Virus record (IMG/VR): IMGVR_UViG_3300023174_000040
Location: 124,001-188,000 of that record
DNA: 64,000 nt
Direction: 5' to 3' (one strand)
Shown here: one piece after another, positions 44,320-62,413 of the stretch
Layout: the number at the start of each line of letters is the position of its first letter
Numbering within the stretch: position 1 is the first letter of the stretch
The notes under the pieces: generated by a model
Told to the model about the DNA's origin: nothing
The model's input: only the letters and a program-made list of their open reading frames with translations
Database searches by the model: none
Made by a program: the position numbers and the translations under genes

Positions 44320-44355
44320 AAGTTTCTCTGTTTCTTTTTGGTACGGTCTCTGCTT

Positions 44356-44646
44356 ATGGAAACTAGTAAAAACAGTATGCTTGCCAGTTTCGACCAGAAA
44401 CTCGCTGAATACAAGACTCTCCTAGAGAGTCACGACTGGTATTACAGTTGGAGCGACGATAATAGGGTCTGGAGTAGTGGTGAACAGAACCTCAAGCGTC
44501 TGAAAGAAATTGCAGAGTTTGGTGGTTTGGCTTACCAGATCCTGTTTAACGAGGAATACCAGAAGCATTTTAATGAGGGGTGTTTTAAGACTAGTTTTTC
44601 ACACACTGGTAATCCCTCTTGTGGATCTCCTCCTTTTAAAGTCTAG
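44356..44646 (+). CDS. hypothetical phage protein, candidate leaderless
   Basis: ATG 9 nt after motif; HDWYY.WSDD; MLASF. Confidence 0.65.
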   Translation: METSKNSMLASFDQKLAEYKTLLESHDWYYSWSDDNRVWSSGEQNLKRLKEIAEFGGLAYQILFNEEYQKHFNEGCFKTSFSHTGNPSCGSPPFKV

Positions 44647-44673
44647 AGTTTCCCTCTGGTACGGTTTTTGACT

Positions 44674-44889
44674 ATGCAAAACATTAGTATCTCCTGCCGA
44701 CTCTGCGGTGCAAAAAAAGATATTAGTGTTGATCCCTCCACATATGTGAAGTGGAGTACGGGACAAGGTTTGGTTCAAGACTTGTTTTCCAATCTTAGTG
44801 CAGATGATCGGGAATTGATGATTAGTCAGACTTGTGGAACCTGTTTCGACAACTTGTTTCCACCAGAGAATGATTATGATGAAGATTAA
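44674..44889 (+). CDS. small Zn-binding phage protein, candidate leaderless
   Basis: CxxC...LSADDRELMIS.TC..C; ATG 9 nt after motif. Confidence 0.65.
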   Translation: MQNISISCRLCGAKKDISVDPSTYVKWSTGQGLVQDLFSNLSADDRELMISQTCGTCFDNLFPPENDYDED

Positions 44890-45361
44890 TCCTCATCCTG
44901 ACTGGATTGAAACTGGCCTAAAAACCCGTCCAGATTGTTATCATTATATACGCAAAGTGAGTCTAGTCACCTCTACTGAAGGCAAGGGTTATTGGAGCAG
45001 AGTGGCTAAAGATGTGAAGATAATCAAACTAGATTTGAATACCTACGAAGGACACGATGATCGGTTTGAATTAAGGGCGTATTTTTCCAAGAAAACTTGG
45101 AATGTTGAAAAGCATGGCTTAATTTATACTGACAAACTTTGGCTCACTACCTTTAAGAAAAGTCTAGTTGATTCTGGTTTCAGTAAAAAGGGACTCAATG
45201 CAGTAGACTATAGTGAACAGGGTATGCAGGGCGATGATTATGTGAGTATGGATGTATCGTCGCCCGGTGTTCACGATCAAGTTGATAGTTTCATTAAAGA
45301 TTACGAAAAAGTTCTTTATAGTGTCAAAGACAGGTTTTTAGGTAGTTTAAGAAAGAAGTAA
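44876..45361 (+). CDS. hypothetical phage protein
   Basis: GLIYTD..YSEQGMQG.DYVS. Confidence 0.65.
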   Translation: MMKINPHPDWIETGLKTRPDCYHYIRKVSLVTSTEGKGYWSRVAKDVKIIKLDLNTYEGHDDRFELRAYFSKKTWNVEKHGLIYTDKLWLTTFKKSLVDSGFSKKGLNAVDYSEQGMQGDDYVSMDVSSPGVHDQVDSFIKDYEKVLYSVKDRFLGSLRKK

Positions 45362-45445
45362 GTTTCCTTTTGGTACGGTTGGTGGTTGTTCCCGATTCAA
45401 CGTGAGTCTGGAAGAAAGGGTTGTTTAAAGAGGGAGTTTAATACT

Positions 45446-45700
45446 ATGGGTCGTGCTAAGGGTCAGGCTGGTGTGTCGCTGGAGCGTTTCCTTACCTGTG
45501 TCATCGAGACGCAGCGGGCTGGTGGTAGCGTTGAGGATGTTGCGAACGAACTGGGCATTGTGGCCGGTTCGGTTTCGGTGCGTCTTTCGCAGTTGCGGAA
45601 GAAGCATGGTCTGAACATCCCTCGCTTTGAGGGTGGTGGTCGGACTAGCAACACCGCTGAACGGGCAGCGATGATCCTCGCCTCGCTTGGGGTTGAGTGA
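45446..45700 (+). CDS. HTH protein, paralog 2 of 6
   Basis: GGSVEDVANELGIVAGSVSVRLSQLRKK; GGAG RBS; GC hairpin after. Confidence 0.8.
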   Translation: MGRAKGQAGVSLERFLTCVIETQRAGGSVEDVANELGIVAGSVSVRLSQLRKKHGLNIPRFEGGGRTSNTAERAAMILASLGVE

Positions 45701-45858
45701 TAGTTAAATCTTCTCCCCTCCCCCTTTAATGTGGGGGAGGGGAGGGGTTGACGAAAAGTTTGTTTCTGGTACGGTAGTGTTTTGTTGCGGCTTTAGTTAA
45801 AAAGCAATAGTATGTTGCTATGGTTGAAACTTTGTGGAAAAACTTTAAGGAATAACTA

Positions 45859-46305
45859 ATGACTGCTACTTTTACAAAAGACGTTACATTCGATGTTGAA
45901 ATCGAATATAATATCAAGGCAACTAGCGATGTTGTAATTAAGGATACAGGTGATGTTGTAAAATTCGATAAAAATAATGTTCAGAAACGTAAGATTACAC
46001 TTAGCGGCGAAACACTGGATGATATGCAACAGGACTTTTCTTACGCTGTTGGTTATAATCTCTCTATAGAACAAATGCTAGAAGTTATTTTTAGCGATGT
46101 TGATATGATGAATGATGTTCTTATGTTTGGAGGAAGCACAGATAGCGGAGCAAAAGATAATTTTAGCAATGCTTTTGGCAAGTTTGTTCTCAAGGATGAT
46201 CGCCATTGGCCCAAGGGTGGTGATCCTAATGAATATACGAAGAAGTATTTTGATGACTTGAATGAAACAGCAGTTGAATTGGGTTACGTTAAAATTCCAA
46301 GTTGA
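45859..46305 (+). CDS. hypothetical protein
   Basis: flanked by duplicated hairpin plus motif module. Confidence 0.6.
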   Translation: MTATFTKDVTFDVEIEYNIKATSDVVIKDTGDVVKFDKNNVQKRKITLSGETLDDMQQDFSYAVGYNLSIEQMLEVIFSDVDMMNDVLMFGGSTDSGAKDNFSNAFGKFVLKDDRHWPKGGDPNEYTKKYFDDLNETAVELGYVKIPS

Positions 46306-46406
46306 CTTCTTAGCGGTTGAGTGAAGAATTAAATCTTCCCCTCCCCTTTATATGGGGGAGGGGAGGGTGACGAAAAGTCTGTTTCTGGTACGGTAGTGTT
46401 TAGCCT

Positions 46407-46479
46407 GCGGCTTTAGCTCAATTGGCAGAGCAAGGGGCTTTTAACCTCTAGGTTCCGGGTTCGATTCCCGGAGGCCGCA
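46407..46479 (+). tRNA. tRNA-Lys(TTT)
   Basis: acceptor GCGGCTT/AGGCCGC; AGGGG-CT-TTT-AA-CCTCT; TTCGATT T-loop; no encoded CCA. Confidence 0.95.
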
Positions 46480-46502
46480 CTCTTTCTGTACGGTGAGTGA
46501 GC

Positions 46503-46856
46503 ATGGAAACAATCCAAAAAGAAAAACTCCTCACCAGTTTTGTTGAAGTTAAGAAAATTTATCTTCATGCTCGTCGATGGTTTCAACGCTCTTATGGTAA
46601 TACCTACCATACCGTTGAAATTTGGGTAAATGACCGATTGGTTCATAAGATTCCTTTCACGATTCTAGATCGTAAATCTGCTGGGTATGACCATCAATGG
46701 TCATGCGATGCCTGTAAGTGGCTGGTTGATAATGGTTATGGACGTTTTAATGGAGTCTATCCAATCAGCAGTTTATTTCTTTTTATATATTGCCGAGAAA
46801 TTGGAATAGAGTATAATCATACTGTTGAAGATGTTAAAAGAAAGAGGGATCTTTAA
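46503..46856 (+). CDS. hypothetical protein, candidate leaderless
   Basis: ATG 9 nt after TGTACGG; KLLTSF. Confidence 0.65.
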   Translation: METIQKEKLLTSFVEVKKIYLHARRWFQRSYGNTYHTVEIWVNDRLVHKIPFTILDRKSAGYDHQWSCDACKWLVDNGYGRFNGVYPISSLFLFIYCREIGIEYNHTVEDVKRKRDL

Positions 46857-47095
46857 TGAGTGATCAACATTCTAATTGGTGGCACAAATTTATTAGTGGT
46901 ATGCCTCCACTTAACAAGATTAGCAAGGACTTTGAAACTTCGTCTCAAACATTTAGTGAAAAAGTCGCAGATTTACGATCTAGAATCAAAAAGTTCAAAG
47001 AACAAGTTGAATCAGAGACTAAGGCTTTTTATAAGAAGAAGAAAAAAATTCTTCGTCGTGACCCTGCCCGCCCCTGGTGAAAAGGAAATTTAATT

Positions 47096-47449
47096 ATGAC
47101 TACCTTGACTAAAATTATAATGCCAAACGTGGAAGTTCTTCGTAAGACTGGTTATAAGGTTCGTGTTTATCACGGGCGAACTTATCTCCGTTGTGAAACT
47201 AATGAAAGGCTTAATACTCCAGAGATCGTTTGTGAGTATATGAGCAAGCGTGAATATGAACACTTCAATAATGAAGTTCGCCGGGTGAACTGGGAACTCA
47301 GTTGCAAGGGCGGCTTTACTATTGTGGAGATTACTACTCCTGATGGTCGTGATCTGAGGGGTAAGTTTAATGTTCCAGCAGGCGGAATGTTTAATCGTAA
47401 ACTGGGCGTGAAGATTGCTACTAATCGGGCTCTTAAGAGTGGGGCATAA
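47096..47449 (+). CDS. hypothetical protein
   Basis: AAGGA RBS. Confidence 0.6.
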   Translation: MTTLTKIIMPNVEVLRKTGYKVRVYHGRTYLRCETNERLNTPEIVCEYMSKREYEHFNNEVRRVNWELSCKGGFTIVEITTPDGRDLRGKFNVPAGGMFNRKLGVKIATNRALKSGA

Positions 47450-47810
47450 AATGAAGATTTTTGTAGTATTTGATTTTCCGGAAATTAAAGATGCTAATAG
47501 CGAGGAAGCCACTTTTGAGATTGATAGTCTGAGTGAGGATGTCAATGGTCTTGGTTATAATTGGTATATTGATGAAGTTATAGGAGAAGAGGATAAAGGT
47601 TGACCAATATCCTCTATTAGATTATAATAGAGGTATTATGGAAAAATATAATTGGATTGTTTGGAAGAACAACCGAATAGCAGGGTATGTATCTGCTTAT
47701 AGCGAATGGGACGCAATTAGATTTGCCAGAATGAAGTTTGGTTGTGAAACCTGGGTAGAAAGAACGGTAGAATCTGGTACGGTGTGAGGGCGTCACACGG
47801 AGAACTCTAG

Positions 47811-48041
47811 ATGCTAGACGATATTGACTTTAGTGATTTCATTCTTGGTGGTGAAACTGAAACCGCTCAGAAGAAGAATAAGAGAATCCCCCTTGAAGTT
47901 TTCCTCAAGAGTATTGTAGAAGCCGTCAAGAATGGCGGAAACAGTATTAGTGTTGCAAATGAATTGGGGATCTCTCCTCAAGCAGTAAGGCAGCGTTGTC
48001 ATAAACTCCGGGCTAAGGGAGCCCCTGTGCCACAATGGTGA
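47811..48041 (+). CDS. HTH protein, paralog 3 of 6
   Basis: GGNSISVANELGISPQAVRQRCHKLRAKG. Confidence 0.75.
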   Translation: MLDDIDFSDFILGGETETAQKKNKRIPLEVFLKSIVEAVKNGGNSISVANELGISPQAVRQRCHKLRAKGAPVPQW

Positions 48042-48326
48042 ATCTTATGGATAAGGAACAGGCCACACTATTTTGTAAGATCGCAGGTAAACTTTCTTAT
48101 TCAAAGAGTTTAACTCAAGATAATGTTCTCAAGAATAGTTTAGATGATATTCTCGAGATGATTAGTTTGTATTGTGATACCGCCCCTGATAATCTACTTC
48201 GTAATAATATCGACGTTGTTATGGAGCATAAGAATTGGCAGATACAAAAGGGTTTGGTACAATAAAAACCCCCAAGAGGTTTAAGTCTTGGGGGTTTACA
48301 CCAAAAGTTTTCAGATTTGGTACGGT

Positions 48327-48413
48327 GGAATCTTGGCCGAGCGGATTATGGCAGCGGTTTACTAAACCGCCGAAGGTTAAAATCTTCCGGGGGTTCGAAT
48401 CCCTCAGATTCCG
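48327..48413 (+). tRNA. tRNA-Ser(ACT), class II
   Basis: acceptor GGAATCT/AGATTCC; G73; GCGGT-TT-ACT-AA-ACCGC; long variable arm; TTCGAAT. Confidence 0.9.
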
Positions 48414-48466
48414 TTTTATGGAATAATAATATGGATTGGAACGGTTTTCGGTACGGAATAAAAAAG

Positions 48467-48854
48467 ATGCGTAAGATTGAACAAGAGATGATTGATAGCA
48501 TCTTGAACAAGAAGAATCATTCTTGTGGCAACACTAGGGTTGAAGTTGCCGATGATGTGATTCTTGTCTTTTTGTTTAATAACCTGATTGCTAAAATTAC
48601 CAACAAGACTGTAGGGATTAATAATCAGGGATACACTACATATGTTACCAAGAGCCGGCTTAATTGTATCCTTCGTAAATTTTGTGAAGGTAGAAATATT
48701 TACCAGAAAGATTTCAACTGAAGGTAGAAATATTTACCAGAAAGATTTCAACTGGTATATTAGTGGCGAGCCCATATTAAACAATAGTTCAGAATACCCC
48801 AGTAATGTTTGGAATTACTTTCCAAATGTGGTACTATTGAAAAGTTTTGAATGA
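48467..48854 (+). pseudogene. phage gene frameshifted by 34-bp tandem duplication
   Basis: TGAAGGTAGAAATATTTACCAGAAAGATTTCAAC x2 (48685-48752); removing one copy joins MRKIEQ... to ...LLKSFE. Confidence 0.7.
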
Positions 48855-49247
48855 AACAATACGTCATAATTGATACAAAGAAAAAATTTGTTGATGGTGA
48901 ATATCCGTCAGGTGGTTTTGAAATATATTTATTGAGTGATGGTAAAGAGTTATATATCGACTCTAGTCCCGATTGGGATAGTGTATCAAATTTTGTGAAG
49001 ATGGCCAGTAAAAATTCTACCATTCAGGTTGAATACAGGTCTCTGCTAAATAATAGTAATGTTTTACGTTCACATTTACTATGAACAAGGGCAAATCAAA
49101 TACGGCCCATATGAGAATCCAGAAACATTACATAATTTTTTGGATAATCTTCCTTATGATGAAAATTTAATTGTCATGGAAACAGTTAAGGAAGAAACGG
49201 CCCGATAGTTTTTGGTACGGTAGAGTAGTAACGAAAGGATAGAAAAA

Positions 49248-49604
49248 ATGGAACATTATCGTTATTATTGCACTGTTAAACTCAACAACATTGAGGACAG
49301 GCTCAATATTTATAACTGCGATCCCGGTGATGCCACTATGTGGTACGGCGGAATCTGTGAAGTTATGGAAATCTTTGGAGGTACGGTTAGTAACCTTATG
49401 GGTGAACCTGTAACTCAGGATCAAATCCTAGAGGAATTTAGGAAGGAAGAAAGTGACGCTAAACTTAGTTTCTGCCTAGCGACTGGCATGACCCGCCGTG
49501 ATGCTAGTTCTGTGACGGTTAGTTTCAAACCTTCTGTGAATGTTTCTTCTGAGAACCCTGTAGACGAAAATAACAACAATAGTCCACTAAGGTTCCCAGA
49601 ATAA
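49248..49604 (+). CDS. hypothetical protein
   Basis: after motif 49214. Confidence 0.6.
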   Translation: MEHYRYYCTVKLNNIEDRLNIYNCDPGDATMWYGGICEVMEIFGGTVSNLMGEPVTQDQILEEFRKEESDAKLSFCLATGMTRRDASSVTVSFKPSVNVSSENPVDENNNNSPLRFPE

Positions 49605-50010
49605 TGAATGAACATATCAAGACTTTTTTAAGTGAAGGTTTCGACTTTATAATCGGTAATCATGTAAGCGGATTTAGAGTTGCAGTTAGAGATAGTGAAT
49701 ATGGTGAAGTAACTTTTAGTACAGGCAATGATGTTGAAACTTTAATGCTTGATTGCATTAAACAGTTTGACAATAGTGTGAAAGTTAAAGCGGCTGAGAA
49801 GGTTAAGAGACTGGCGAGAAGGAAGAAGGAAATACAGAAGGAACTTGAAGAAGTTTCAACTGAACTGGCAAATATAACTCTGAACTCATTCCAGAAATAA
49901 AAAGAAATAAACAGAGAAACTTGTCTTTTGGTACGGTTGATGGACGTTGCGACGGTGAGCCACTTCGGCAAACGGCAACAAAGGGTTGAATAACGCAGGA
50001 GATTACTACT

Positions 50011-50265
50011 ATGGGTCGTCAAGTTGGACAGAAGGGTGTCGCTCTGGAGAAGTTCCTGACCACGGTGGTCGAGACGCAGCGGGCCGGCGGTTCGGTGCAG
50101 GACGTTGCCGATGCTCTGGGCATCACGGCCGGTTCGGTGTCGGTGCGTCTCTCGCAGTTGCGGAAGAAGCACGGTGTGAACGTCCCCCGGTTCGAGGGGT
50201 CGGGCCGCACCAGCAACACCGCAGAGCGGGCGGCTGAGATTCTCGCCAGCCTTGGGGTTGGTTGA
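50011..50265 (+). CDS. HTH protein, paralog 4 of 6
   Basis: GGSVQDVADALGITAGSVSVRLSQLRKK; terminator 50298-50340. Confidence 0.8.
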   Translation: MGRQVGQKGVALEKFLTTVVETQRAGGSVQDVADALGITAGSVSVRLSQLRKKHGVNVPRFEGSGRTSNTAERAAEILASLGVG

Positions 50266-50363
50266 AGTTAAAGGCTGATATAATAATCGGCCATAAGAAC
50301 CCCCTCCCGTAAAACGGAGGGGGTTTATTTTTTATTTGTTATAGACTATATTGTTTTTGGTAC

Positions 50364-50438
50364 GGCCCTATCGTATAGCCCGGTCTAGTACATCCCCCTT
50401 TCACGGGGAAAACATCGGTTCAAATCCGATTAGGGTCA
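50364..50438 (+). tRNA. tRNA-Glu(TTC)
   Basis: acceptor GGCCCTA/TAGGGTC; TCCCC-CT-TTC-AC-GGGGA; TTCAAAT. Confidence 0.92.
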
Positions 50439-51143
50439 TTTAATCCACTTCTTGATTGTGTTGCCTGTAACACCATATTTTCTTCCTGTGGCATTATAGC
50501 CGTTTACTTTTATTTCATTTAAAAGCAAATCCATTTCAGGTCTTTCTACTTTTCTCATCTTCATAACTTGTTGTTTATGTATATGGGATACGTAACATCC
50601 AGCACAATATTTGCTGCTCTTTGAAACTTTTTTATCACATAAGATACACAAGTGTTTAACAAACCTTTTGCCACTATGAGTATGTGTTTGGCTATGACAG
50701 TTAGGACAAAGTAATCTTAAGTTTTCAATTCTATTGTCATTTGATATACCGTTAATATGATCTAATTGTATTGTTAATGGTTCACCATGCCACTCACCAT
50801 TGTTTCCACATTTAGAACATTTATTTTCCCATCCTAGTTCAATAAGTAATCTTCTTTTTAAATTACATCTATTATAGGTTGAGTTTTTAACCATAACTTG
50901 TGAAAGAGGAATTTTCTCTGATTGAAACTTCCTTCCCTTATTACTACCTAAGCCTAATTTAATATGGGAATAATCAATCTGCTCTTCGTCCAATCTTCGT
51001 TTAAGTATTTTGTACGATGCTCCACTTGAAACCATTTCGCATTTCCGTATAATCTCTGCTATGCTACTTGAAGATTTAACAATCTCCATCATTGTCTCTT
51101 TAGGTATCTTCCAGAATAAACTTGTTCGCTCCCTTTCACGCAT
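50436..51143 (-). CDS. HNH homing endonuclease
   Basis: CxxC..LDHING...DNR.ENLRLLCPNCHSQT; C-terminal HTH; stop overlaps tRNA-Glu 3' end. Confidence 0.9.
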   Translation of the reverse strand: MRERERTSLFWKIPKETMMEIVKSSSSIAEIIRKCEMVSSGASYKILKRRLDEEQIDYSHIKLGLGSNKGRKFQSEKIPLSQVMVKNSTYNRCNLKRRLLIELGWENKCSKCGNNGEWHGEPLTIQLDHINGISNDNRIENLRLLCPNCHSQTHTHSGKRFVKHLCILCDKKVSKSSKYCAGCYVSHIHKQQVMKMRKVERPEMDLLLNEIKVNGYNATGRKYGVTGNTIKKWIK

Positions 51144-51428
51144 AAATCTCCTTTAAAGTTAGAACCGTGTATACACTAATATAGTGTCCTAACTTTAAAT
51201 TTTAAAAACATTATGAAACGATCAAATAACTATTCTGTGAAAGAAGAAGGCCGCTGGTTTGTGGTTTATAAGGATCACAAGCCAGTCACCGATAAAGGCG
51301 ATATTCACCAAAAGCCATTTGTAGTCAAATGGCAGAATAAAGAATCAGCTGAAAAGTATATAAAAGAATTAAACAAAAACTTTGACGGTGAAACAATAGC
51401 CGGTCTGTATTCGGTACGGTAAGACAAC

Positions 51429-51707
51429 ATGAACACATGGAAAAGCAGTCATAACTTCCCTCCGGAAAAGGATCAGGAAGTTTATTACTTCGGCCCTAAT
51501 ATTGGGATCGGTATTGGCAAATACCATTACGAAGAACGTGAAATAAAGGGGACTAAACTTTGTCCTCATATCTTTGTGAATAATAAGTTCGGAGTAGTAG
51601 ACGCTTGTGATGCTCCATTCTGGATGCCTTATGATAATGAAAAGGCTAAAGGTTGGTGTCCAATCATTCCAAAAGAATATACTAAGGGCATATACGAGAA
51701 CGATTGA
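51429..51707 (+). CDS. hypothetical protein, candidate leaderless
   Basis: ATG 9 nt after motif. Confidence 0.6.
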   Translation: MNTWKSSHNFPPEKDQEVYYFGPNIGIGIGKYHYEEREIKGTKLCPHIFVNNKFGVVDACDAPFWMPYDNEKAKGWCPIIPKEYTKGIYEND

Positions 51708-51860
51708 TTTTGGTACGGTGTGGAGTCAACGAGATACAAACTGTGTGTCTGCCGACAGTATGGCACGGATGAAGATTACGGATATTTCGGGGATAGTGAT
51801 TTTTGATTTTGGTACGGTTGTGGGTTGTTCCGAAACAAACATTCTTCAAAGGATTAGAAA

Positions 51861-52163
51861 ATGTTTTACCTTCAGATTGCCAGTTTAGTTGTTGGATTAC
51901 TTGTTGCTTGTCTCCAGTGTGGTAAGGAAGCCGCTCCTGTTGTTCACACTATTGTGGAGGCAAGAAAGCATCATCACAATGAACCCCAATATAATGTCTA
52001 TAGGGGTTATGATAATAACTACCGGTATTGGAGTGATTCTACCGGAACATATTGGTGCAGGGTGGATCGTCAAGGCTCTATGGAGATTGCTGTGGTGAAT
52101 CAGTCCTCACAATCTCAGCAGCAGATTATGATTTGTCAGACGCCCAACAACACGATTCGTTGA
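51861..52163 (+). CDS. possible lipoprotein or secreted protein
   Basis: hydrophobic N-terminus ending LVAC. Confidence 0.5.
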   Translation: MFYLQIASLVVGLLVACLQCGKEAAPVVHTIVEARKHHHNEPQYNVYRGYDNNYRYWSDSTGTYWCRVDRQGSMEIAVVNQSSQSQQQIMICQTPNNTIR

Positions 52164-52650
52164 TTCCGGTACGGTTCAAGAATACCTCAAAGGAGAAAAA
52201 CAGTGGACAACTGGACTATTATCGACGATACTAAACTCCGCCACGTTTGGCGTTGTGCAGATTGTGATTGTGTTACTCATGTTACTCCGTGGTGGTATGA
52301 AGATGCCGGAACCCCGGTATGCGAAAAGTGCGGCGAAGATATGAAGTATCTTAGCACAGAGTTCAATAACATCTAGTACGGGTTTACCTTACCCAAGGAG
52401 CGGAGCAAAAGATGAACACTGAACTGGAACAAATCGCAAGGGCTATCATCGGCATTAGCGTTGCCGATCTTACTAACGCCGAAAGAATCATCTATAAGAT
52501 TCTGAAGAAGCGTAACATCGTTTGTGAACGGGGTCATTATGTTGAACTTACTAATGATCCAGAACTCAATGCCCACTATGATGAAATGGAAATGTATAGT
52601 CAGAGTCAAGAGTGGCCCGAAGATTATCCCTTCTAGTACGGTGAATAAAA

Positions 52651-52824
52651 GTGAAAATCATTATTGAAGTGAACATGGACAACGATAGTTTCAATGATAA
52701 CCCCAACGAACTGGGTGAGATTCTAACTCAAATCCCCCATAACATTAAAGCGGGGGATAGCGGTAATCTCAAAGACTCTAACGGCAACAAGGTGGGATTT
52801 TGGGACGTATTTGAAAGTTTCTAG
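52651..52824 (+). CDS. small protein (57 aa, GTG start), candidate leaderless
   Basis: GTG 9 nt after AGTACGG; D.NGNKVG.W. Confidence 0.55.
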   Translation: MKIIIEVNMDNDSFNDNPNELGEILTQIPHNIKAGDSGNLKDSNGNKVGFWDVFESF

Positions 52825-53944
52825 TACAGGTATCCTATAAGCGGTGGAAGTCAAAAACGCCACTGGACGTTAGACCAGTATGGATACTTCTAAGGAAAAG
52901 AAAATGTATTGGATTTCTCGCTGGAAAGTTTTCACAATGAAAAACTGGATTTGCTACAATCTGTTTGGTGAACATCCAGATGATGTTGACACTTTTGGCA
53001 TGGTTAGTGGGCTAGGCATTTTGGCTTTCTTGATTTTTTGGACTAGTTATCTTTTTATCTATATTCCTCTTTATTTCTGTCGCTAAAGGATTGAACTAAT
53101 GGATACCATTGATACTCTCAAGATTTGATACTCTCAAGATGCTCAGGTGATACTCTCAAGATGCTCAGGATTTTTGTGGATACTGCTCCCCTGAATAGTC
53201 AGGGTATGGTTGAGCCTGATACTCTCAACTTCATTAGCATGAGGCTGGGTAGTATTGTTGAAACTCTGGAGCGAGAAAAAACTCTCTCTGATGAACTCCG
53301 TCAGATTTTGGTACGGTAAAGGTTTGTCCTAAACATCACTAAACATCACTAAAGAGTAATAAAAATGACAATAACAGACATTTTCATCATCGGTATGTAT
53401 CTAACTAGTCTTTTTGGTACGGTTGTGATCGTAGCGAGTTTCTTTTGGGTGATTGACACTTTGGTCAATGCACTTTACAAGCCAACCTCTAAGATTAAAA
53501 CCATGATTGCTGAGGATGGTAATGAATGGCAGGTGGGGTACATTGACGAGTTCCCCGGCTATAAGAAACTTTTTTAGTACGATCAATCATCAAGGAGAAA
53601 ACCAATGAACGACTTCTACGATGGATTCTATGAAGATTGGTGGGGGACTAAGAATGTGAAGGGTCACGACGCCCACAAGGGATACAATAAACACGATATT
53701 GCCTCAAGGAGAAACTATCGGGACAGGGTATTAGAATACCTTAGACTGGAGTTTTGTGATATTGGGGATTGGTGGCATCTCCCCATCAGCGGTGTTAATA
53801 TCAACAGGGTATTGTTAATCAGCCTTATTAACGACTGCCAGAATGATAATATGAAGATCAACAACGCCAGCGGTGTTGTCTATGAATGGCTGAAGGGCAG
53901 GAATCTGATTTAGTACGGTGAATAGGCAACAGAGGAGAGTAACA

Positions 53945-54265
53945 ATGCAAGAACAAGTCGAACTTTGGCTCGCTGCTTTGACTGAGAAGTCTAACACCAC
54001 TGGGGCTGAGACTAAATACATTCTTGAACCGGGGCGAAAGTATACTAGAGTGGTTCGTCAAGAGCGTTGGCTGGGTAGTAACGGGGAACCGCTGTGGGCG
54101 GTTAACAAAAGTGTCCATGCCTTTATAGACCAAAATGGGGATATTTATAAGGCAGCAAGTTGGAAGGCTCCGGCCAAAAATGGAGCAAGATTTAATGTTG
54201 TGAACGATATTCAACGGTTGGTCGAAGTTTGTGATCCCTATGGTAGTTATCTCTACAAGAGGTAA
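53945..54265 (+). CDS. T4-like-phage hypothetical protein
   Basis: GRKY...VHAFID..GDIYKAASWKAPAK..RFN. Confidence 0.7.
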   Translation: MQEQVELWLAALTEKSNTTGAETKYILEPGRKYTRVVRQERWLGSNGEPLWAVNKSVHAFIDQNGDIYKAASWKAPAKNGARFNVVNDIQRLVEVCDPYGSYLYKR

Positions 54266-54881
54266 GATCAGGTACGGTTATCAACCAGAGGAGAATAACA
54301 ATGCTTTGGCAAAAGAAAAAGAATCGGTATAATACCAAGCCGTATTACGAAGCAAAAGAGGGAGATGTTGTGTATCAACTCCGATATATTCCCTTCAAGG
54401 GTTGGCAAGCATCAAGGCAGGAAGGCAACAGTTGCACCCTGCCGGGAATAAAGAAGGACATGGCGGAGGCTATGGGCTGGTGCATGAGTAACCTTTCGGT
54501 ACGGTAGAGAGATATGGAAAACAGTTTTTACGGTTTCTGGTCAAAGGGAGAAAAAATGCCAGACGATACAAAAACTAGTAGTGGTCTTGACCGGCAAACT
54601 TTGAGTTTCCTTGAAGATTATTACGCAAGGGAGACTGTGAAGCCGGTTTCAAGCCTTATCGAAGCCGCCACACAGTTTGAAAAGGAGCCAGATTTTAAGA
54701 ACTATCTGGCTATGAGGGATCTTTTTAGGGATATTGAAGCAAATATGACACGGAGAGACGCCTTCCGTTGTCATAATCGGTAAAGGATAAGATTCGGTAC
54801 GGTTAGGGTTTGTTCCGACAGCAAGCCAATGAGGCAAGCGGGAACCAAAGGGTTGGTAACTATAAGCAGGAGATGATTACT

Positions 54882-55142
54882 ATGGGTCGCCAAGTTGGTC
54901 AGAAGGGTGTTGATCTTGAGACGTTTCTCACCACGGTTATCGAAGTGCAGCGGGCTGGTGGCAGCGTCGAGGACGTTGCAAGCAAGTTGGGCATCGTTCC
55001 GGGTTCGGTGAGTGTTCGTCTGAGCCAGTTGCGGAAGAAGCACGGGCTGAACATCCCGAAGTTTGAGGGTGGTGGTCGCACCAGCAATACCAAGGAGCGT
55101 GCGACGGAGATTCTCGCCAGCCTTGGCGTCGAGATGCTCTGA
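54882..55142 (+). CDS. HTH protein, paralog 5 of 6
   Basis: GGSVEDVASKLGIVPGSVSVRLSQLRKK; GC hairpin 55154-55189. Confidence 0.8.
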   Translation: MGRQVGQKGVDLETFLTTVIEVQRAGGSVEDVASKLGIVPGSVSVRLSQLRKKHGLNIPKFEGGGRTSNTKERATEILASLGVEML

Positions 55143-55362
55143 AGTTAGTCACACTCACCCCCCGGCCAAATAACAGGCCGGGGGGTGAGGCCCACGGGTT
55201 TCCAGTGGGTACGGTTGGTGGTTCCTGGTTGAAGCCGGGAATCTGACTGGTTGTGAATAACTAAGAGAATAACTAAGAGTTTCATCATGATGTGCTTCCT
55301 TGGATTGTGTAGCGGTATTATTTCTATTATCATTGATAATAACAACCCACGCTAAACAATCT

Positions 55363-55409
55363 TCGACCGTCCCGTTTGGGGATTCACTAGGTTCAATCCT
55401 AGCGGTCGA
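55363..55409 (+). ncRNA. mini tRNA-like structure without anticodon arm
   Basis: TCGACCG/CGGTCGA stem; CCC-GTTT-GGG hairpin; CTAGG-TTCAAT-CCTAG T-arm. Confidence 0.4.
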
Positions 55410-56520
55410 TTTTGGTACGTCGATTTTGGTACGGTAAAACTTCAAAGGAGAATCCAAATGTGGCTTGCAATGGTCATTCGTGACAGTGTTCCTGAGAGTG
55501 TTACCAGTTTCGACAACTACTATGATGCAGTGGGTTGTGCGGACGATTGGATTATTAAGTTTGACCCGTCAGTAACTCATTCAACCCTCCCCCGATATTC
55601 TAGGGGTGAGAGTTACCATAAGGATGGTTTGAGGGTAGATATTCTAGAAATCAACTAGAAACTAGAATCTGGTACGGTCGGGAGTTGTTACCCGAAACGA
55701 AAGGAAATCATGGCGTTAGAAACCACTATTGATGATCTGGTTCAGCGGTTCGGAGAAGAGCCGTTCCCATGCACCTTCATCCATCGGTTCGACCCCGAAA
55801 GGGTGGCGGCATTCGACCGTGAACGGGCGGTACACTGGCTCATCGGCAAGGTCAATGGACCGAAGATCATGTTATCACTCCTGCCGGATCGTCTTGTGTT
55901 CGAGGAGTTGATTGATTCATTGGATTCCTATGGTTGGAATCTGCTGGTCGAGGGTGGCATTAACTATCGCATCAAGAGGCATGACTAGAATCCGGTACGG
56001 GTTAGTGTTGTTCCCTTACCACTTCTCAGGAGTTAAAGATGAAAGTTAGTAAGACTCGTCGCCTGAAGTTGCTCAAGGACATGGAAGCCTCAAAGGAGAT
56101 TCACCAGCGGGGTCACTACACTGTCAACGAGCGGGTTCTGGTTGATACCATCGTCGGCATCATTGAGAATCAGCGGATGATTGAAATATCGGAGGTTGTG
56201 GAACCGGAATCTAGTACGGGTTAGATTTGTACGGTATATTATTTGTAACAACAACCCCTCAAGGAAAAATCAAGATGAACCTCCAGATTAAAGTCGAGAA
56301 GTATATGGACGTTGTGAACGGCAAAATGGCACGGAAGGATTGGATCGAATCTTGCTTTGCAGGTGATATGTATGAAGCAGTTATGTTCGTGAAAAGACTT
56401 TTTCAGAAGGGCGTTAAACTTCCCTGCGGAGATCGTCTTCCTTATCCTAAGGAGGGTTGATAAGGAAAATAGATTCCAGTACGGTTTAGAGTTGAGACCC
56501 AACCACTAAGGAACCAGAAG

Positions 56521-56925
56521 ATGCCGTGGCAAATCGTTGATGAACCCAAGCCAGTCCAGTTCTATCCGGTCGAGACAGATAATGGCACAGAGTTTCGTCG
56601 GGTTGGTGGTCTTATGGTCAAGGGAACCATTCGACACTCCAAGGCTGACGAGGATCAAGTCTGGCGGGTTGTTTATACTAATCGGGCCGGAAGAGGCACT
56701 TTTAGTATTACGGCTCCAGATCGCACCGTAGAGCGTCAGAATCACAAACTAGACTTTGTGAAAGTAAAGGCTAAGGCTACGGTCTACAGGAACGGGAATC
56801 GTAAAGGTGGAATGACCCCTCACGCTTTCCAGCGGGAACTAGCAGAAATGTGCGGTGGAAACTTCGCTGGTAGTTTCTATGGTCAAATGGTCAATGCTGT
56901 GAAGGTGGCATTGGGGGCCGAATAA
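56521..56925 (+). CDS. hypothetical protein
   Basis: motif upstream; long hairpin terminator 56938-57005. Confidence 0.65.
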   Translation: MPWQIVDEPKPVQFYPVETDNGTEFRRVGGLMVKGTIRHSKADEDQVWRVVYTNRAGRGTFSITAPDRTVERQNHKLDFVKVKAKATVYRNGNRKGGMTPHAFQRELAEMCGGNFAGSFYGQMVNAVKVALGAE

Positions 56926-58535
56926 AGAGGAATAAAGTCCCCCCGATCATATTGCCGATTCCACGCTTTGCGTAGAGTTTTCAATATGATCGGGGGATTT
57001 TTTTGTTCTTTCCTTTTATGTTTTTGGTACGGTAAAAAACCAAAAGGAGAAAAAGTGATGACCCCAGAGCAAAAAAATATCATCGACCGTGCTCTTAGCA
57101 CTCTTATCTGGGAGACTAAGAAGAATATTCTGGACACCCAGAATAGCGGTGAGTTTGATGCCGCAGTCAAACAGTTCCTCGTTGAACAGAGGAAGTTATT
57201 GGAGGATGCAACCATACTCCGAAAGGAACTCAGGGAAGAAAGTCTTTGGAATCCAGTACGGTAAAGGTTTGTCTTAACCCTAGCCCAAAGGAAAAACAAA
57301 TGTTCAAGAACATCAAGTGGTTCGATGGATTGTCTTGGGTCAGTGGTTACATTCTGGAGATCATGTTCAAGGACGGTAAGAAGGGTTACATTAAGAATAC
57401 TGACCGCAAAAAGATTAGTCATCTTTTTGAAACTTTGTGGAACGACCACAACATCATCGGTTTGACCGTCTATAATATTGATGAAAAGGTTGAGGATGCT
57501 AAGTATCGTTATCTTGGTTGAAATAGGTACGGTAAACTCTTGTTCCATCAACAAAGAGGACTAAAAGAAATGACTGCCGTTATCACTGGCCCGAATGTTG
57601 AAAAGTATCGTCTGCTCAGTCTCAAGAGTGCATTGAAGTTGGAGACTAAAGGATTGAAGCACTCAAGGTTCAACGTCAGCCAGATTGTGAAAGGTATTCT
57701 GGCCGAAAAGGGAATCAAGCCTAAGAATAATAAGATTCTGTTGCTCGTCCAGTTTGAAACCTACTTGGAGGGGGTCATCTGAGGCTTATGTCTGGTACGT
57801 AAAAGGCTTACCCCCGGAGAACTTGTGATGGCCGCTCGTTACGTTACCATCTCTGAAAACATGATTGAGCCTAGGCTCCTTGTTGAAGGTTACTTAAACG
57901 CAAACACAATAGCAGAACGCAGAGAGGCATTTCACTTATATCGTGTATTAACTGAAAGTGAAATGAGTCAAGTCGCTAGAGAAATGGGTTACATTGCCTT
58001 GGTTGATCTTAATCCAAGGTGGATTGAAACCAGTTACTGTAGATTTTATGTTCGGTTAACCTAGGGTAAAACCTAGGTTAACTTTTTAAGTTAACAACTT
58101 AATGTCTGGGTACGTAGAAGGGGTACGCTTTCGGTACGGTAAACTCTTGCCGATAACTCTGGGAGTTTCATCATGAAGAAGTATGAAGTAACCTGTTGTG
58201 ACACGGGTAAAACAATAGTCTTGACTCATAAAGAGATGGTCGAAAAGTTCGGCAAGGTTGAGTTCAAAGAGATTCTGAAAGGATACCTTCCCCATCTGGT
58301 CGCTGTTGAAGTATTCAGTACGGTAGATGGTTGTGAACCCAACACTCAAAGGAGAGTCTAATGGATGACTTTGACCACTTTGATATGATGCAGGAAACAG
58401 TCCTCTGGCCTTGGGTTGATGATCCAAGTTATGACAATGAAGATGCAGAGGATGAATGTAACTATGATCCAACGGAAGAAGAAAACTAGTACGGTAAGAA
58501 ACTGTTATCTTTCAATAACCAATAAAGGAAAAACC

Positions 58536-58781
58536 ATGAAGCGTCAGACTGTTAGCGTTGAAACGTTCGTCAATGTCATCATGCGGCATCTCAACAATGG
58601 TGGAAACCAAACCAGTGTTGCTAAGGAGTTGGGAATCACTCCGGCAGCGGTTTGCCTCCGCCTCAAGTATCTCCGTCAGAACGGTGCTTGTGTTCCTAAG
58701 ACTAAGAAAGAGTTGAAGTCTCGCCGGAACAAGGCAAGTATCGTGGCCGCTGCCAACAAGGAAATGAAGGGTTGGAAGTGA
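58536..58781 (+). CDS. HTH protein, paralog 6 of 6
   Basis: GGNQTSVAKELGITPAAVCLRLKYLRQNG; GC hairpin after. Confidence 0.75.
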   Translation: MKRQTVSVETFVNVIMRHLNNGGNQTSVAKELGITPAAVCLRLKYLRQNGACVPKTKKELKSRRNKASIVAAANKEMKGWK

Positions 58782-58870
58782 AAAGGGGAGAGGGGGGAGA
58801 AACAAAAAACTCCCCCCTCTCCTTCTGGTACGGTTAATGTTTGTAACCTTAACCAAAAAGGAAGTTTCAA

Positions 58871-58981
58871 ATGCGTAAGACTCGTTGTGCTGGCAAGGCG
58901 GTTGGAATGAGTTATTGCAAGCATCTTCGCAAGTTTGGCAAGCGGGTCGCTAACAAGGCAACCCGCCGGGAAAAGTTCTAA
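58871..58981 (+). CDS. 36-aa highly basic peptide
   Basis: MRKTRCAGKAVGMSYCKHLRKFGKRVANKATRREKF; AAGGA RBS, motif upstream. Confidence 0.5.
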   Translation: MRKTRCAGKAVGMSYCKHLRKFGKRVANKATRREKF

Positions 58982-59246
58982 TCTGGTACGGTGTCAGCGA
59001 TTGAGACTGACAAACTGTTGTTGAAAGCAAATGATAAGGGAGGGATTAAAGGGATGAAAAAGATCATTGTCGAGATCGAGGCCAGCGATTGGACTCAGGA
59101 AAACATTGATAGTTTACATGATTGGCTTCAGGACGAACTACAAATGGGCAACATGGGAACTGGCGATGATGCTCATGTCGTGAGCATCAAGTTTGCTGAA
59201 AGTCTCTGAGGCAACCCGCCGGGAAAAGTTCTAATCTGGTACGGTG
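58956..59246 (+). repeat. ~37-bp exact direct repeat flanking a small gene (59054-59209)
   Basis: AGGCAACCCGCCGGGAAAAGTTCTAATCTGGTACGGTG at ~58956 and ~59209. Confidence 0.9.
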
Positions 59247-59523
59247 GTTGAGTGTAAGGAACTTCAACCTCTGGAGAAAACAGATGACTCCTGTTGAGAT
59301 TGCCATTAAGGCCAAAGACTTCTTGAAGGGTAAAAAGTATCCTTCAGAGAGAATGATCCAAGACGCATTAGAAGCCAGCATGGTTTCTTGTGGCATTGAT
59401 CCCGAATCGGGTGCGGGGATGTTTCTTTATGGTCTGTCCTTGCAAGTCTGGTCTGAGCAGCGGTGATAGTATCTGGTACGGTTACTGAGTGTAAGGAACC
59501 TTCAACCCTCTGGAGTTTAGAAG

Positions 59524-59997
59524 ATGAACGACATTCAAATGCTGGCTCTGAGCAAAGTGAAGTTCGACCGGGATAACATTCCGGTTGGGGATCATACGGT
59601 TGATTTCACGGTTCGGGTCAGTGGAACCGTCAAGGTGGGCGACGATTACGAAAGGGACGCTACCACTAGCATCCCGTGGTTGGAATCGGTGGCTCTGTGG
59701 CAGGAAACCGCTAGTGCTGCTTGGGATAGCCTTATCAGTCGCATGGATAAGGGGGAGACTATCACCCGTAGTGATCTGGTTGCAATGCGTAAGACTGGCC
59801 CGCTTGCCACTGGGGTGCTCGTAGATTGCATTAGAACGGCGTTGGTCAAGGGGGAGTCTGCGGTAGGGTCTATCCTTGATCGTGTCACAGAAGTCAAAGA
59901 GGGCGTCGAGAACGTGAAGCGGGAGTTGGTGAAACAACTCCCCAAGCAAAGTTGCAAGGGGGCAACTAAGGTAGTCTGCGATTGGCAGATAGTCTAG
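59524..59997 (+). CDS. hypothetical protein
   Basis: GGAG RBS; last gene of the motif array. Confidence 0.65.
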   Translation: MNDIQMLALSKVKFDRDNIPVGDHTVDFTVRVSGTVKVGDDYERDATTSIPWLESVALWQETASAAWDSLISRMDKGETITRSDLVAMRKTGPLATGVLVDCIRTALVKGESAVGSILDRVTEVKEGVENVKRELVKQLPKQSCKGATKVVCDWQIV

Positions 59998-60015
59998 GTT
60001 GTCTATTCGATTCCT

Positions 60016-60091
60016 GGCAGCGAGTAATGGGTACAGCCGGGCGTTAGGCCCGTGCCGAGGCCATGCAGCCATTAGTGTGGCGCTCGCTGCC
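60016..60091. ncRNA. candidate GC-rich structured RNA
   Basis: GGCAGCGAG/CTCGCTGCC, TAATGG/CCATTA and CGGGC/GCCCG nested stems. Confidence 0.45.
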
Positions 60092-60495
60092 GGGGGGAGG
60101 GGCTAAACTCTCCCCCCCTTATTACTGGCGGGTAGGATTCTGGTACGGATTCGTGGTATGTGAGAAGAATCCGGTACGGTTCCTTGAAAAATGAAAACAG
60201 TTTTTGGTACGGTATATTTTTACAAAGTTAAAAACTGAAAAACTAAAACTGAAAAACCCTGGGGGTAGGGTTTGGTACGGGTACCGGTTCAACGCCATTA
60301 CGCCCTTTTTCTTTTCCCTTTATATTTCTTTTTCCCGAGCCATGAACTTTAAATGAACTTTAGAATGGGCTTCCCTACTTTTTTTCAAAGTTATATCCAA
60401 TTAACTTTAAACATACCCCCATAAACCTATAATTTTCCAAAAACGGTTTCTAAAAAAATCCGGCGGGTATAATTTTTGAGATACTGTAGGGTTTT

Positions 60496-62168: not shown

Positions 62169-62303
62169 AATATTTTCTTTGTATTTAATATTTCGGAGGC
62201 TGACGCTGGTTATGTGAGGAAATTAAAAGGGAAATTAAAACCTTCCCTTTTAATTTCCATTCGAGAGAAATATCTTTTCGGTTTTTTTGAATGACTGGTC
62301 TTA

Positions 62304-62411: not shown

Positions 62412-62413
62412 CT

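What the first reader, a model, noticed from the sequence alone, without database searches (positions are those of the whole stretch)
44330..59530. The motif also behaves as a cassette junction for gene shuffling
Seen: four ORFs end in Val-Arg-stop encoded by the motif itself (GTA CGG TAA/TAG: 51422, 53319, 54507, 57264), and others stop inside TAGTACGG (52636, 53913). An exact ~37-bp repeat ending in the motif brackets gene 59054-59209. The leaders after 59238 and 59475 are near-copies (TGAGTGTAAGGAAC..TTCAACC.TCTGGAG). A ~95-bp hairpin plus motif module is duplicated at ~45705-45800 and ~46329-46420, the first copy keeping only the first ~11 nt of tRNA-Lys. Known: T4-like phages shuffle early-gene modules by recombination between repeated promoter/stem-loop elements. 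Inference: an integron-like but probably integrase-free expandable array.
Basis: partly seen in the sequence, partly recalled or inferred. Interest (0 to 1): 0.65.

Follow-up and report, generated by a model that had tools for sequence, protein, structure and literature searches.

The report
Motif-bounded gene cassettes in giant phage
In an uncultured freshwater giant phage, a 16-kb row of about 50 tiny genes and three tRNAs, each preceded by the same 18-base promoter-like signal, gains and loses single genes at that signal between related strains; this is the shuffling already described for T4-like phages, not an integron.

Summary
All four observations are real. The window lies in a 323-kb lake virus record. 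GTACGG occurs 97 times on the + strand and 5 on the - strand. 48 copies sit in window 44341-60275. 41 of 47 curated cores lie 4-90 nt upstream of a gene or tRNA, and 24 of 49 stop codons fall inside or beside the motif.

Four other haplotypes of the array were found, most of them assembled independently from several samples. Gene order is conserved, but single units come and go. Against the closest relative (about 94% identity) there are 13 indels of 30 bp or more in 16 kb. 15 of 26 breakpoints lie within -12..+10 of a motif core (7.5% expected if uniform, 26% if only intergenic sites are allowed). The genome lacking a cassette keeps one motif copy. The 38-bp repeat brackets a cassette absent from all other lineages.

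No integrase, resolvase or RecA was found in the held record. Crossover positions and repeat lengths vary from 4 to about 105 nt. Allelic recombination switch-points are not enriched at the motif.

The best reading is homology-driven cassette gain and loss at a repeated promoter-like element, analogous to T4-type PeSLs, plus HNH homing beside the tRNAs. The integron analogy fails every defining feature tested. Promoter function and circular intermediates remain untested.

The parts
44341..60280 (+). Hyperplastic array: 48 GTACGG copies, all on the + strand, about 49 small ORFs and 3 tRNAs. 47 curated motif cores.
   Evidence: 41 of 47 cores have a gene or tRNA start 4-90 nt downstream (median 38).
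58956..58993 (+). 38-bp exact repeat, copy 1. It contains the last 26 nt of ORF 58871-58981 plus the motif.
   Evidence: D9.
59209..59246 (+). 38-bp exact repeat, copy 2, non-coding here, starting at the last base (A of TGA) of the stop codon of ORF 59054-59209.
   Evidence: D9.
58994..59208 (+). Cassette W40 (leader plus 51-aa ORF 59054-59209). It is present only in the window lineage. G001 and L058 have one copy of the repeat and no cassette.
57788..58126 (+). Cassette W35 (degenerate motif GGTACGT at 57794, ORF 57828-58064, hairpin 58054-58083, two further degenerate GTACG copies). Absent from G001 and L060. Junction microhomology is GCTT, 3 nt upstream of the resident motif.
56176..56468 (+). 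Private segment (ORF 56275-56460 with two motif copies 15 nt apart at 56214 and 56229), replaced by 93 bp in G001. The right breakpoint is 10 nt before core 56479.
45695..45799 (+). Hairpin plus motif module, copy 1. It ends with the first 10-11 nt of tRNA-Lys.
45859..46305 (+). 148-aa ORFan between the two module copies. It is private to the window lineage and has no Pfam, PHROG or IMG/VR relative.
46318..46418 (+). Hairpin plus motif module, copy 2, running into tRNA-Lys.
46407..46480 (+). tRNA-Lys(UUU), with motif cores 19 nt upstream (46388) and 8 nt downstream (46488). The allele is 76% identical to that of G001 and L060.
48320..48460 (+). tRNA-Ser(ACU) unit bounded by cores 48320 and 48451. 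Present in the window and L058. G001 has 1123 bp with two minus-strand ORFs instead.
50360..51205 (.). Core 50360 overlapping the first two bases of tRNA-Glu (50364-50438), plus an HNH endonuclease gene at 50436-51143 on the minus strand. G001 has 88 bp (another tRNA-Glu allele) instead of these 840 bp. The left breakpoint is at +6 of the core.
51713..51811 (+). 99-nt remnant unit between two cores. G001 carries 874 bp more here, including tRNA-Leu.
54499..54508 (+). Motif core where G001 carries an extra 195-bp cassette flanked by two motif copies.
55409..55436 (+). 14-nt tandem duplication TCGATTTTGGTACG x2 (two cores 14 nt apart). G001 has a 258-bp cassette inserted at the same core, flanked by GTACGGTAAA. 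L060 and L058 have one plain copy.
57015..57033 (+). Motif where G001 carries an extra 190-bp cassette. The junction homology is 17 nt and includes the core.
59239..59283 (+). Motif plus leader of ORF 59284-59466, a near-copy of the next leader.
   Evidence: D7.
59476..59523 (+). Motif plus leader of ORF 59524-59997, a near-copy of the previous leader.
   Evidence: D7.
60143..60280 (+). Four motif copies in 138 nt with no gene behind them, conserved in G001, L058 and R2. This is the end of the array, ahead of a convergent SET-domain gene.
45446..45700 (+). Small HTH gene, type A copy 1. The paralogues are at 50011-50265, 54882-55142, 47811-48041 and 58536-58781. They are conserved anchors of the array in all lineages. 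The A copies are 55-60% GC, and each is followed by a poly-C/poly-G hairpin.

Best explanation
Window 44.3-60.3 kb is the hyperplastic, probably early-gene, region of an uncultured freshwater giant phage. Each small gene or tRNA carries its own copy of an 18-nt strand-specific signal, GTTTCyTTyyG-GTACGG-T; in the array the upstream half is looser and often supplies the stop codon of the preceding gene. The signal is most likely a promoter read by a phage-specific polymerase or factor that has not been identified.

The signal is the only sequence shared between otherwise unrelated neighbouring units. It therefore acts as the homology patch at which general, recombinase-independent recombination or template switching inserts, deletes and replaces single-gene cassettes. 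These events could occur between co-infecting relatives or between copies within one genome. Some junctions include a poly-C/poly-G terminator hairpin or the leader, so the flanking repeats range from 4 to about 105 nt.

A crossover inside the motif leaves the upstream gene with a stop codon and the downstream gene with a promoter, so such recombinants stay viable. A second, independent source of change is HNH homing endonuclease genes beside the tRNA genes.

Shown: the anatomy, the cassette differences, the breakpoint positions and the single retained motif copy. Inferred: promoter function, the recombination pathway, and circular intermediates.
For: Motif anatomy:
- The motif is strand-specific, 97 copies against 5.
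- It has contiguous information from -11 to +6.
- 41 of 47 array cores lie 4-90 nt upstream of a start. These include tRNAs that begin at +4, +7 and +19.
- GTAC is otherwise avoided in this genome.

The haplotypes are real. Five array haplotypes were found, and several were assembled independently at 99.98-100% identity from different samples, so the differences are not assembly artefacts.

Indel density. The array has 13 indels in 16 kb against G001. The structural half of the genome has about 0.08 per kb.

Breakpoints at the motif:
- 15 of 26 breakpoints lie at -12..+10 of a core. The chance probability is 5e-11 against a uniform null and 6e-4 against an intergenic-only null.
- In the multi-lineage set, 53 of 116 breakpoints lie within +-20 nt, against 11-13% expected.
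- Genomes lacking a cassette keep exactly one motif, and the aligned blocks overlap by 4-54 nt across it.

Gains. With the other lineages as outgroups, four cassettes are lineage-specific gains at a motif: G001 +258 and +190, and window 57788-58126 and 58994-59208.

By-products of recombination. Motif pile-ups occur at 55415/55429, 56214/56229, 58110-58134 and 60143-60275. A 38-bp exact repeat, a roughly 45-nt repeat and a roughly 105-nt repeat flank private cassettes.

Hairpins. 9 of 47 cores have a strong poly-C/poly-G hairpin just upstream, at -31 to -38 kcal/mol. PeSLs are described the same way.

Precedent. PMC2839356 links 10 of 14 differential ORFans in phi1/RB49 to a contiguous PeSL.
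Against: - Promoter activity is not shown, and no RNA polymerase, sigma factor or RecA-type recombinase was found in the held 64% of the genome.
- Three of 13 indels (47451-47599, the in-frame 54 bp at 52905, and 60006-60091) have no motif at either end.
- Several events in more distant pairs show only 3-12 nt of microhomology away from the motif.
- Intergenic space is short and the motif fills about a quarter of it, so selection for intact genes explains part of the enrichment.
- Allelic recombination switch-points among three lineages are not enriched at the motif: 6 of 24 against 4.8 expected. The motif is therefore not a general hot spot.
- Gene order never changes among the five lineages, so true shuffling is unproven.
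- No donor was found for any private cassette.
- Read-level evidence could not be obtained.
Confidence: 0.6

Rival explanations
1. The motif is a bystander. Indels arise by random illegitimate recombination anywhere, and only those that remove or add whole genes survive. Every intergenic gap contains the motif, so the breakpoints merely look motif-linked.
For: - Only 19% of the array is intergenic, and 26-42% of intergenic positions lie next to a core.
- Some events use 3-12 nt of microhomology away from the motif.
- Three of 13 indels between the window and G001 ignore the motif.
- Allelic switch-points are not enriched at the motif.
Against: - Breakpoints are still enriched inside the 23-nt motif zone under the intergenic-only null: 15 of 26 against 26%, P about 6e-4.
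- Chimeric leaders, which this model predicts, are rare.
- Junctions keep exactly one motif, with 10-38 nt of shared sequence spanning the core.
- Tandem half-motif duplications and motif pile-ups point to events in the motif itself.
Confidence: 0.22
2. The array is a true site-specific cassette system, integron-like. A dedicated recombinase, or a nickase acting at GTAC, recognises the motif as its site and excises and integrates cassettes as circles.
For: - The core GGTACGGT is highly conserved and single-stranded in orientation, and is kept despite genome-wide GTAC avoidance.
- Cassettes are bounded by it.
- 36% of the genome is missing, so an enzyme could be encoded there.
Against: - No tyrosine or serine recombinase was found in 323 kb.
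- Crossover positions vary from -30 to +19, and flanking repeats from 4 to about 105 nt. A site-specific enzyme would cut at one fixed bond.
- The same motif precedes large conserved genes far outside the array.
- The motif is not an inverted repeat.
- Variable cassettes are spread along the array rather than at one entry site.
Confidence: 0.04
3. Homing endonucleases are the main driver. HNH genes in the array cut near the tRNA genes, and repair from a co-infecting genome replaces the flanking DNA.
For: - HNH genes lie beside tRNA-Glu in the window (50436-51143) and beside tRNA-Lys in G001.
- They differ between lineages.
- The three replacement events at 45788, 48312 and 50366 all involve a tRNA unit with an HNH or other minus-strand genes.
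Against: - This accounts for only 3 of 13 events.
- The simple one-gene gains and losses at 54508, 55419, 57031, 57788 and 58993 have no endonuclease gene nearby.
- Even the HNH-linked replacements have their left edge at a motif, at +6 to +19.
Confidence: 0.12

Closest known systems
PeSL (promoter-early stem-loop) cassettes of T4-type phages (Arbiol et al. 2010, PMC2839356; Comeau et al. 2014, PMC4122927)
   Same: - A repeated regulatory element sits in front of ORFans in a hyperplastic region.
- The stop codon of the upstream gene lies inside or next to the element.
- Poly-G/poly-C terminator hairpins occur beside it.
- Most indels and replacements between close relatives are bounded by the element, and the genome lacking a gene keeps one copy.
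- The proportions are similar: 10 of 14 there, 10 of 13 here.
   Different: - The element here is a contiguous 18-nt motif with no resemblance to sigma-70 -35/-10 boxes.
- Only 9 of 47 copies have a hairpin.
- The shared homology is much shorter than the roughly 100 bp of a PeSL.
- tRNA genes are cassettes too.
- The phage is an uncultured lake giant phage, not shown to be T4-like.
- Promoter and terminator activity and mini-circles are untested here.
Morons of lambdoid phages (promoter-gene-terminator units inserted between genes; my own knowledge, Juhala et al. 2000)
   Same: Single extra genes carry their own promoter-like signal, and sometimes a terminator, and are inserted between neighbours that are adjacent in relatives.
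   Different: Morons are scattered, use host-type promoters and do not share one common junction sequence. Here about 45 units share one motif in a single array.
Integrons
   Same: A one-directional array of small single-gene cassettes separated by a recurring short site, with cassette content differing between close relatives.
   Different: - No IntI-type integrase was found.
- The site is not an attC hairpin.
- Every cassette has its own promoter-like motif, instead of one Pc promoter.
- There is no single attI entry point.
- Crossover points are variable.
Homing endonuclease genes in the T4 tRNA region (SegB; my own knowledge)
   Same: Endonuclease genes sit next to phage tRNA genes and vary between relatives.
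   Different: The enzymes here are HNH rather than GIY-YIG, their activity is untested, and they explain only the tRNA-linked replacements.

Membership tests
PeSL-type regulatory cassette (T4-type phages) | A repeated element concentrated in a hyperplastic region, immediately upstream of ORFans | tested here: met
   48 of the 97 genomic GTACGG copies lie in 16 kb. 41 of 47 cores are 4-90 nt upstream of a start. Most products have no Pfam or PHROG hit.
PeSL-type regulatory cassette (T4-type phages) | The element contains a sigma-70-like early promoter (-35/-10 with an AT-rich upstream region) | tested here: not met
   The consensus GTTTCyTTyyGGTACGGT has no -35/-10 boxes. Sigma-70-like matches number 43 against 32+-5 in shuffles and do not sit at the junctions.
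PeSL-type regulatory cassette (T4-type phages) | The element contains a stem-loop terminator or attenuator | tested here: inconclusive
   Strong poly-C/poly-G hairpins precede 9 of 47 cores. The other copies have none.
PeSL-type regulatory cassette (T4-type phages) | Indels and replacements between close relatives are bounded by the element, with one copy left in the genome lacking the gene | tested here: met
   10 of 13 indels have at least one breakpoint at the motif, and 6-7 have both. The blocks overlap by 4-54 nt across the retained motif.
PeSL-type regulatory cassette (T4-type phages) | Circular excision products (mini-circles) | not testable with these tools
The predicted circle junction has no reference sequence and was not typed in.
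Integron | An IntI tyrosine recombinase gene next to the array | tested here: not met
   PF00589 gave no match in the 323-kb record, and the control search worked in 14 of 14 genomes. PF00239 also gave none. Caveat: the record is about 64% complete.
Integron | attC sites: imperfect inverted repeats that fold as single-strand hairpins, with crossover at a fixed bond | tested here: not met
   The motif is a direct, asymmetric 18-mer. Crossover positions range from -30 to +19.
Integron | Promoterless cassettes expressed from one common promoter, with new cassettes entering at attI | tested here: not met
   Every unit has its own motif copy. Private units are spread over 45.8-59.2 kb. Expression itself was not tested.

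The most novel reading that the evidence does not exclude
The 18-nt motif is more than a passive homology patch. It would be a combined stop-codon, promoter and recombination site that this phage lineage actively uses to capture foreign genes and tRNAs. One route would be a phage enzyme nicking at the otherwise avoided GTAC. Another would be transcription-linked template switching by an unknown phage polymerase. This would amount to an integrase-free gene-capture system.
Probability: 0.08. Interest if true: 0.75.

Novelty: new variant of a known kind. Interest (0 to 1): 0.45.

Why it matters
Promoter-repeat-mediated modular shuffling would not be limited to T4-type phages and their sigma-70-like PeSLs. 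It would also operate in an unrelated, uncultured giant-phage lineage, on a short phage-specific signal of only about 18 nt. That would make it a general route by which phages renew their early ORFan and tRNA repertoire.

The natural haplotypes from several lakes give a ready-made series of recent gain and loss events. These can be used to measure how much homology such recombination needs.

The motif itself also points to an unidentified transcription system.

Tried and rejected
Searches that found nothing:
- Phage GenBank megablast with the array: no match.
- Own-record family searches all gave nothing: PF00940 (T7-type RNAP; the control did not ring, so this is uninformative), PF04542, PF00562, PF00623, PF00589, PF00239 and PF00154, plus a regex for the beta' DFDGD motif.
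- Pfam and PHROG scans of the largest ORFs gave only structural, RCC1-repeat and protease-like hits. They identified neither a polymerase nor the phage family.
- The private cassette proteins (148 aa and 78 aa) have no relative in IMG/VR. The 51-aa protein is found only in the same strain. No donor was identified.
- A literature search for the motif string returned only primer hits.
- Rfam found only the tRNAs.
- A profile of the small HTH proteins against PDB gave only generic HTH matches.

Steps that could not be run:
- The predicted mini-circle junction exists in no reference. It was therefore not searched as typed letters.

Analyses set aside or corrected:
- A simple fixed-offset script for flanking repeats is unreliable for the more diverged pairs. 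I rely on the window-G001 junctions read by eye.
- My first reading of 55415-55428 as a deletion scar was wrong. Two outgroup lineages show a plain single motif there, so it is a 14-nt tandem duplication.
- The motif is not a general recombination hot spot: allelic switch-points were 6 of 24 against 4.8 expected.

No alternative genetic code was used.

Full report
**Context**

The window is bases 124001-188000 of a 323,267-bp IMG/VR virus record. The record is 36% G+C and about 64% complete by CheckV, and corresponds to JGI sample 3300023174. The right half of the record carries portal, baseplate and other virion genes. The left half, including the finding, carries mostly small genes on the + strand.

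**The motif**

GTACGG occurs 97 times on the + strand and 5 times on the - strand of the record.
- 48 copies, all on the + strand, lie between window 44341 and 60275.
- Aligning 63 sites gives a contiguous 18-nt signal from -11 to +6: G-T-T-T-C-y-T-T-y-y-G-GTACGG-T.
- Outside the array the upstream half is the tight GTTTCCyTCy (26 hits to GTTTCYYTYYGGTACGGT — 25 on the + strand, 1 on the - strand). Inside the array it is looser and A/T-rich.
- GTAC is otherwise strongly avoided in this genome, at 0.34x of expectation. 102 of the 358 GTAC sites are in this motif.

**Checking the observation**

All four points hold.
- The ORFs ending at 51422, 53319, 54507 and 57264 finish with GTA-CGG-stop inside the motif. 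Those ending at 52376, 52636, 53913 and 58489 finish on the TAG of TAGTACGG.
- In a curated gene list, 24 of 49 stop codons start between -16 and +8 of a core. 41 of 47 cores have a gene or tRNA start 4-90 nt downstream, with a median of 38.
- tRNA-Glu starts at +4 of its core, tRNA-Ser at +7 and tRNA-Lys at +19.
- The repeat around ORF 59054-59209 is 38 bp and exact (D9).
- The two leaders after 59239 and 59476 are near-copies (D7).
- The hairpin-plus-motif module is duplicated at 45695-45799 and 46318-46418. Copy 1 retains the first 10-11 nt of tRNA-Lys. Both hairpins fold at about -33 kcal/mol.

**Relatives**

A motif search in IMG/VR found a 251-kb relative, G001. It is colinear with the whole record at about 94-98% identity. 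Protein-anchored searches added a more distant contig, R2, at 70-86% identity. They also added seven metagenome contigs that carry the array.

These collapse to five haplotypes:
- W, the window, with a 99.8% twin from an ENA sample;
- G1, assembled three times at 100% or 99.995% identity;
- L060, assembled three times at 99.98%;
- L058;
- R2.

Independent assembly of the same haplotype rules out assembly artefacts.

**Cassette map**

I cut each array at its motif cores and clustered the units. The order is conserved and colinear. 16 unit families are in all five lineages, 10 are in four, 4 are in three, and 27 are private to one. No unit changes its relative position, so I see gain, loss and replacement but no reordering.

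The five paralogous small HTH genes are fixed anchors. tRNA units also vary:
- tRNA-Ser(ACU) is present only in W and L058.
- tRNA-Leu is present in G1 and degenerate in L058.
- There are two tRNA-Glu alleles and three tRNA-Lys alleles.

**Breakpoints, window against G001**

There are 13 indels of 30 bp or more in the 16-kb array, or 0.8 per kb. The structural half has about 0.08 per kb and the rest of the left half about 0.23 per kb.

Six events have both breakpoints within 20 nt of a core. A seventh is the 38-bp repeat, whose alignment ambiguity spans the core. The seven are:
- the 45788-46487 replacement;
- the tRNA-Ser unit at 48312-48460;
- G001 +195 bp at 54508;
- G001 +258 bp at 55419;
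- G001 +190 bp at 57031;
- window +339 bp at 57788-58126;
- window +216 bp at 58993-59208.

Three events have one breakpoint at a core:
- 50366-51205, the tRNA-Glu plus HNH segment;
- the 874-bp difference at 51761;
- 56176-56468.

Three events have none:
- 47451-47599;
- an in-frame 54 bp at 52905;
- 60006-60091.

15 of 26 breakpoints lie between -12 and +10 of a core. This compares with 7.5% of array positions (binomial P about 5e-11) and 26% of intergenic positions (P about 6e-4). The two ends of one event are not independent, so these P values are approximate.

Across all lineage pairs, 53 of 116 partly redundant breakpoints lie within 20 nt of a core, against 11-13% expected.

**Junction anatomy**

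The genome lacking a cassette keeps exactly one motif. The flanking alignment blocks overlap by 4-54 nt across it.

L060 and L058 serve as outgroups at four sites.
- The G001 cassettes at 55419 and 57031 are gains. At 55419 the insert is flanked by the direct repeat GTACGGTAAA and brings its own upstream flank.
- The window cassettes 57788-58126 and 58994-59208 are also gains.
- The 57788 insert carries degenerate motif copies at both of its ends. It sits 3 nt upstream of the resident motif, with GCTT microhomology.
- The 38-bp repeat includes 26 coding bases of the upstream gene, re-used as non-coding DNA after the inserted gene. The right-hand junction of that insertion is therefore not in the core.

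Adjacent motif copies 14-35 nt apart occur at 55415/55429, 56214/56229, 58110-58134 and 60143-60275. These have no obvious use as promoters. They fit by-products of imprecise events at the motif.

**What it is not**

- No tyrosine or serine recombinase was found in the held 323 kb. No RecA, sigma-70 region 2, RNAP beta or beta' domain, or DFDGD motif was found either. About a third of the genome is missing.
- Crossover positions (-30 to +19) and flanking repeat lengths (4, 10, 17, 38, about 45 and about 105 nt) are too variable for a site-specific enzyme.
- The motif also precedes large conserved genes far from the array.
- Homologous exchange between lineages is frequent. The nearest relative of the window changes from unit to unit, for example 86.7% against 97.2% identity in unit 56479-57026.
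- Its switch-points are not enriched at the motif: 6 of 24 against 4.8 expected, P = 0.31.
- The motif therefore matters where neighbours are unrelated and it is the only homology available. It is not a general hot spot.

**Second mechanism: HNH homing**

HNH endonuclease genes lie on the minus strand beside tRNA-Glu in the window and beside tRNA-Lys in G001. The three tRNA-linked replacements involve such genes or other minus-strand ORFs. Homing with co-conversion of the flanks is the likely cause of these three events. This step is an inference from the known behaviour of phage homing endonucleases.

**Mechanism proposed**

- Shown: a repeated, strand-specific motif proximal to gene starts; cassette-level differences among natural haplotypes; breakpoints concentrated in the motif; one motif copy retained.
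- Inferred: that the motif is a promoter. Its contiguous 18 nt ending in GG at the tRNA 5' ends resembles single-subunit polymerase promoters more than sigma-70 ones, but no polymerase was found.
- Also inferred: that short-homology recombination or template switching at the motif creates the indels, that selection keeps the recombinants which retain a stop codon and a promoter, and that excised circles may exist.

**Comparison with known systems**

The closest match is PeSL-mediated modular shuffling in T4-type phages (PMC2839356 and PMC4122927).
- Shared features are repeated promoter elements with poly-G/poly-C stem-loops in hyperplastic regions, stop codons of upstream genes inside the element, and 10 of 14 differential ORFans next to a PeSL.
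- The element here fails the sigma-70 criterion.
- Only 9 of 47 copies have a hairpin.
- I therefore class it as a variant that works like a PeSL, not as a PeSL.

It fails every integron criterion that could be tested.

**Limits**

The predicted circle junction has no reference and was not typed in. Promoter function, the recombination pathway and the donors of the private cassettes remain open.

Noticed in passing
whole record G000 (window included): The tetranucleotide CGCG is completely absent from 323 kb, against about 329 expected from base composition. GTAC, ACGT and GCGC are at about one third of expectation. This looks like strong restriction-site avoidance.
   Followed up: partly
window 48326-48414: tRNA-Ser with anticodon ACU (A at position 34), also present in lineage L058. 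This is an unusual anticodon for a bacterial-type tRNA-Ser.
   Followed up: no
window 48685-48752: An exact 34-bp tandem duplication inside the Kyano_Gp96-like gene (PF23790, E 1e-22). It truncates the gene to 84-96 aa, against 117-119 aa in the other lineages.
   Followed up: partly
window 45446-45700, 50011-50265, 54882-55142, 47811-48041, 58536-58781: Five paralogous small HTH proteins, conserved in all five lineages.
- Three copies are 55-60% G+C in a 36% G+C genome.
- Each of those three has a 73-85-nt leader and a strong poly-C/poly-G terminator.
- The 50011 copy is 99.3-99.8% identical across lineages whose neighbouring units are 83-95% identical.
- They are candidate factors for the motif.
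   Followed up: partly
window 60143-60280: Four motif copies in 138 nt with no gene behind them, conserved in G001, L058 and R2. They point into the convergent SET-domain gene at 60496-60882 on the minus strand, so they might drive an antisense or non-coding RNA.
   Followed up: no
window 62303-62335: A fragment resembling the 5' half of a tRNA (D-arm sequence) lies just upstream of tRNA-Gln at 62340-62412.
   Followed up: no
window 47600-47628: A near-consensus sigma-70-type promoter (TTGACC, 17 nt, TATAAT) lies in front of gene 47638, inside a motif-free operon. Host-type promoters may therefore coexist with the motif.
   Followed up: no
L060 6162-6251 and 6415-6504: A 90-nt direct repeat (95.6% identical, 253 nt apart) next to a truncated HNH remnant downstream of tRNA-Lys in lineage L060. 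This duplication does not involve the motif.
   Followed up: no
window 44341, 44659, 46488, 48451, 51414, 52636, 54499: Seven units have the start codon exactly 15-16 nt after the core and no Shine-Dalgarno sequence. If transcription starts in the core, these mRNAs would be nearly leaderless.
   Followed up: no
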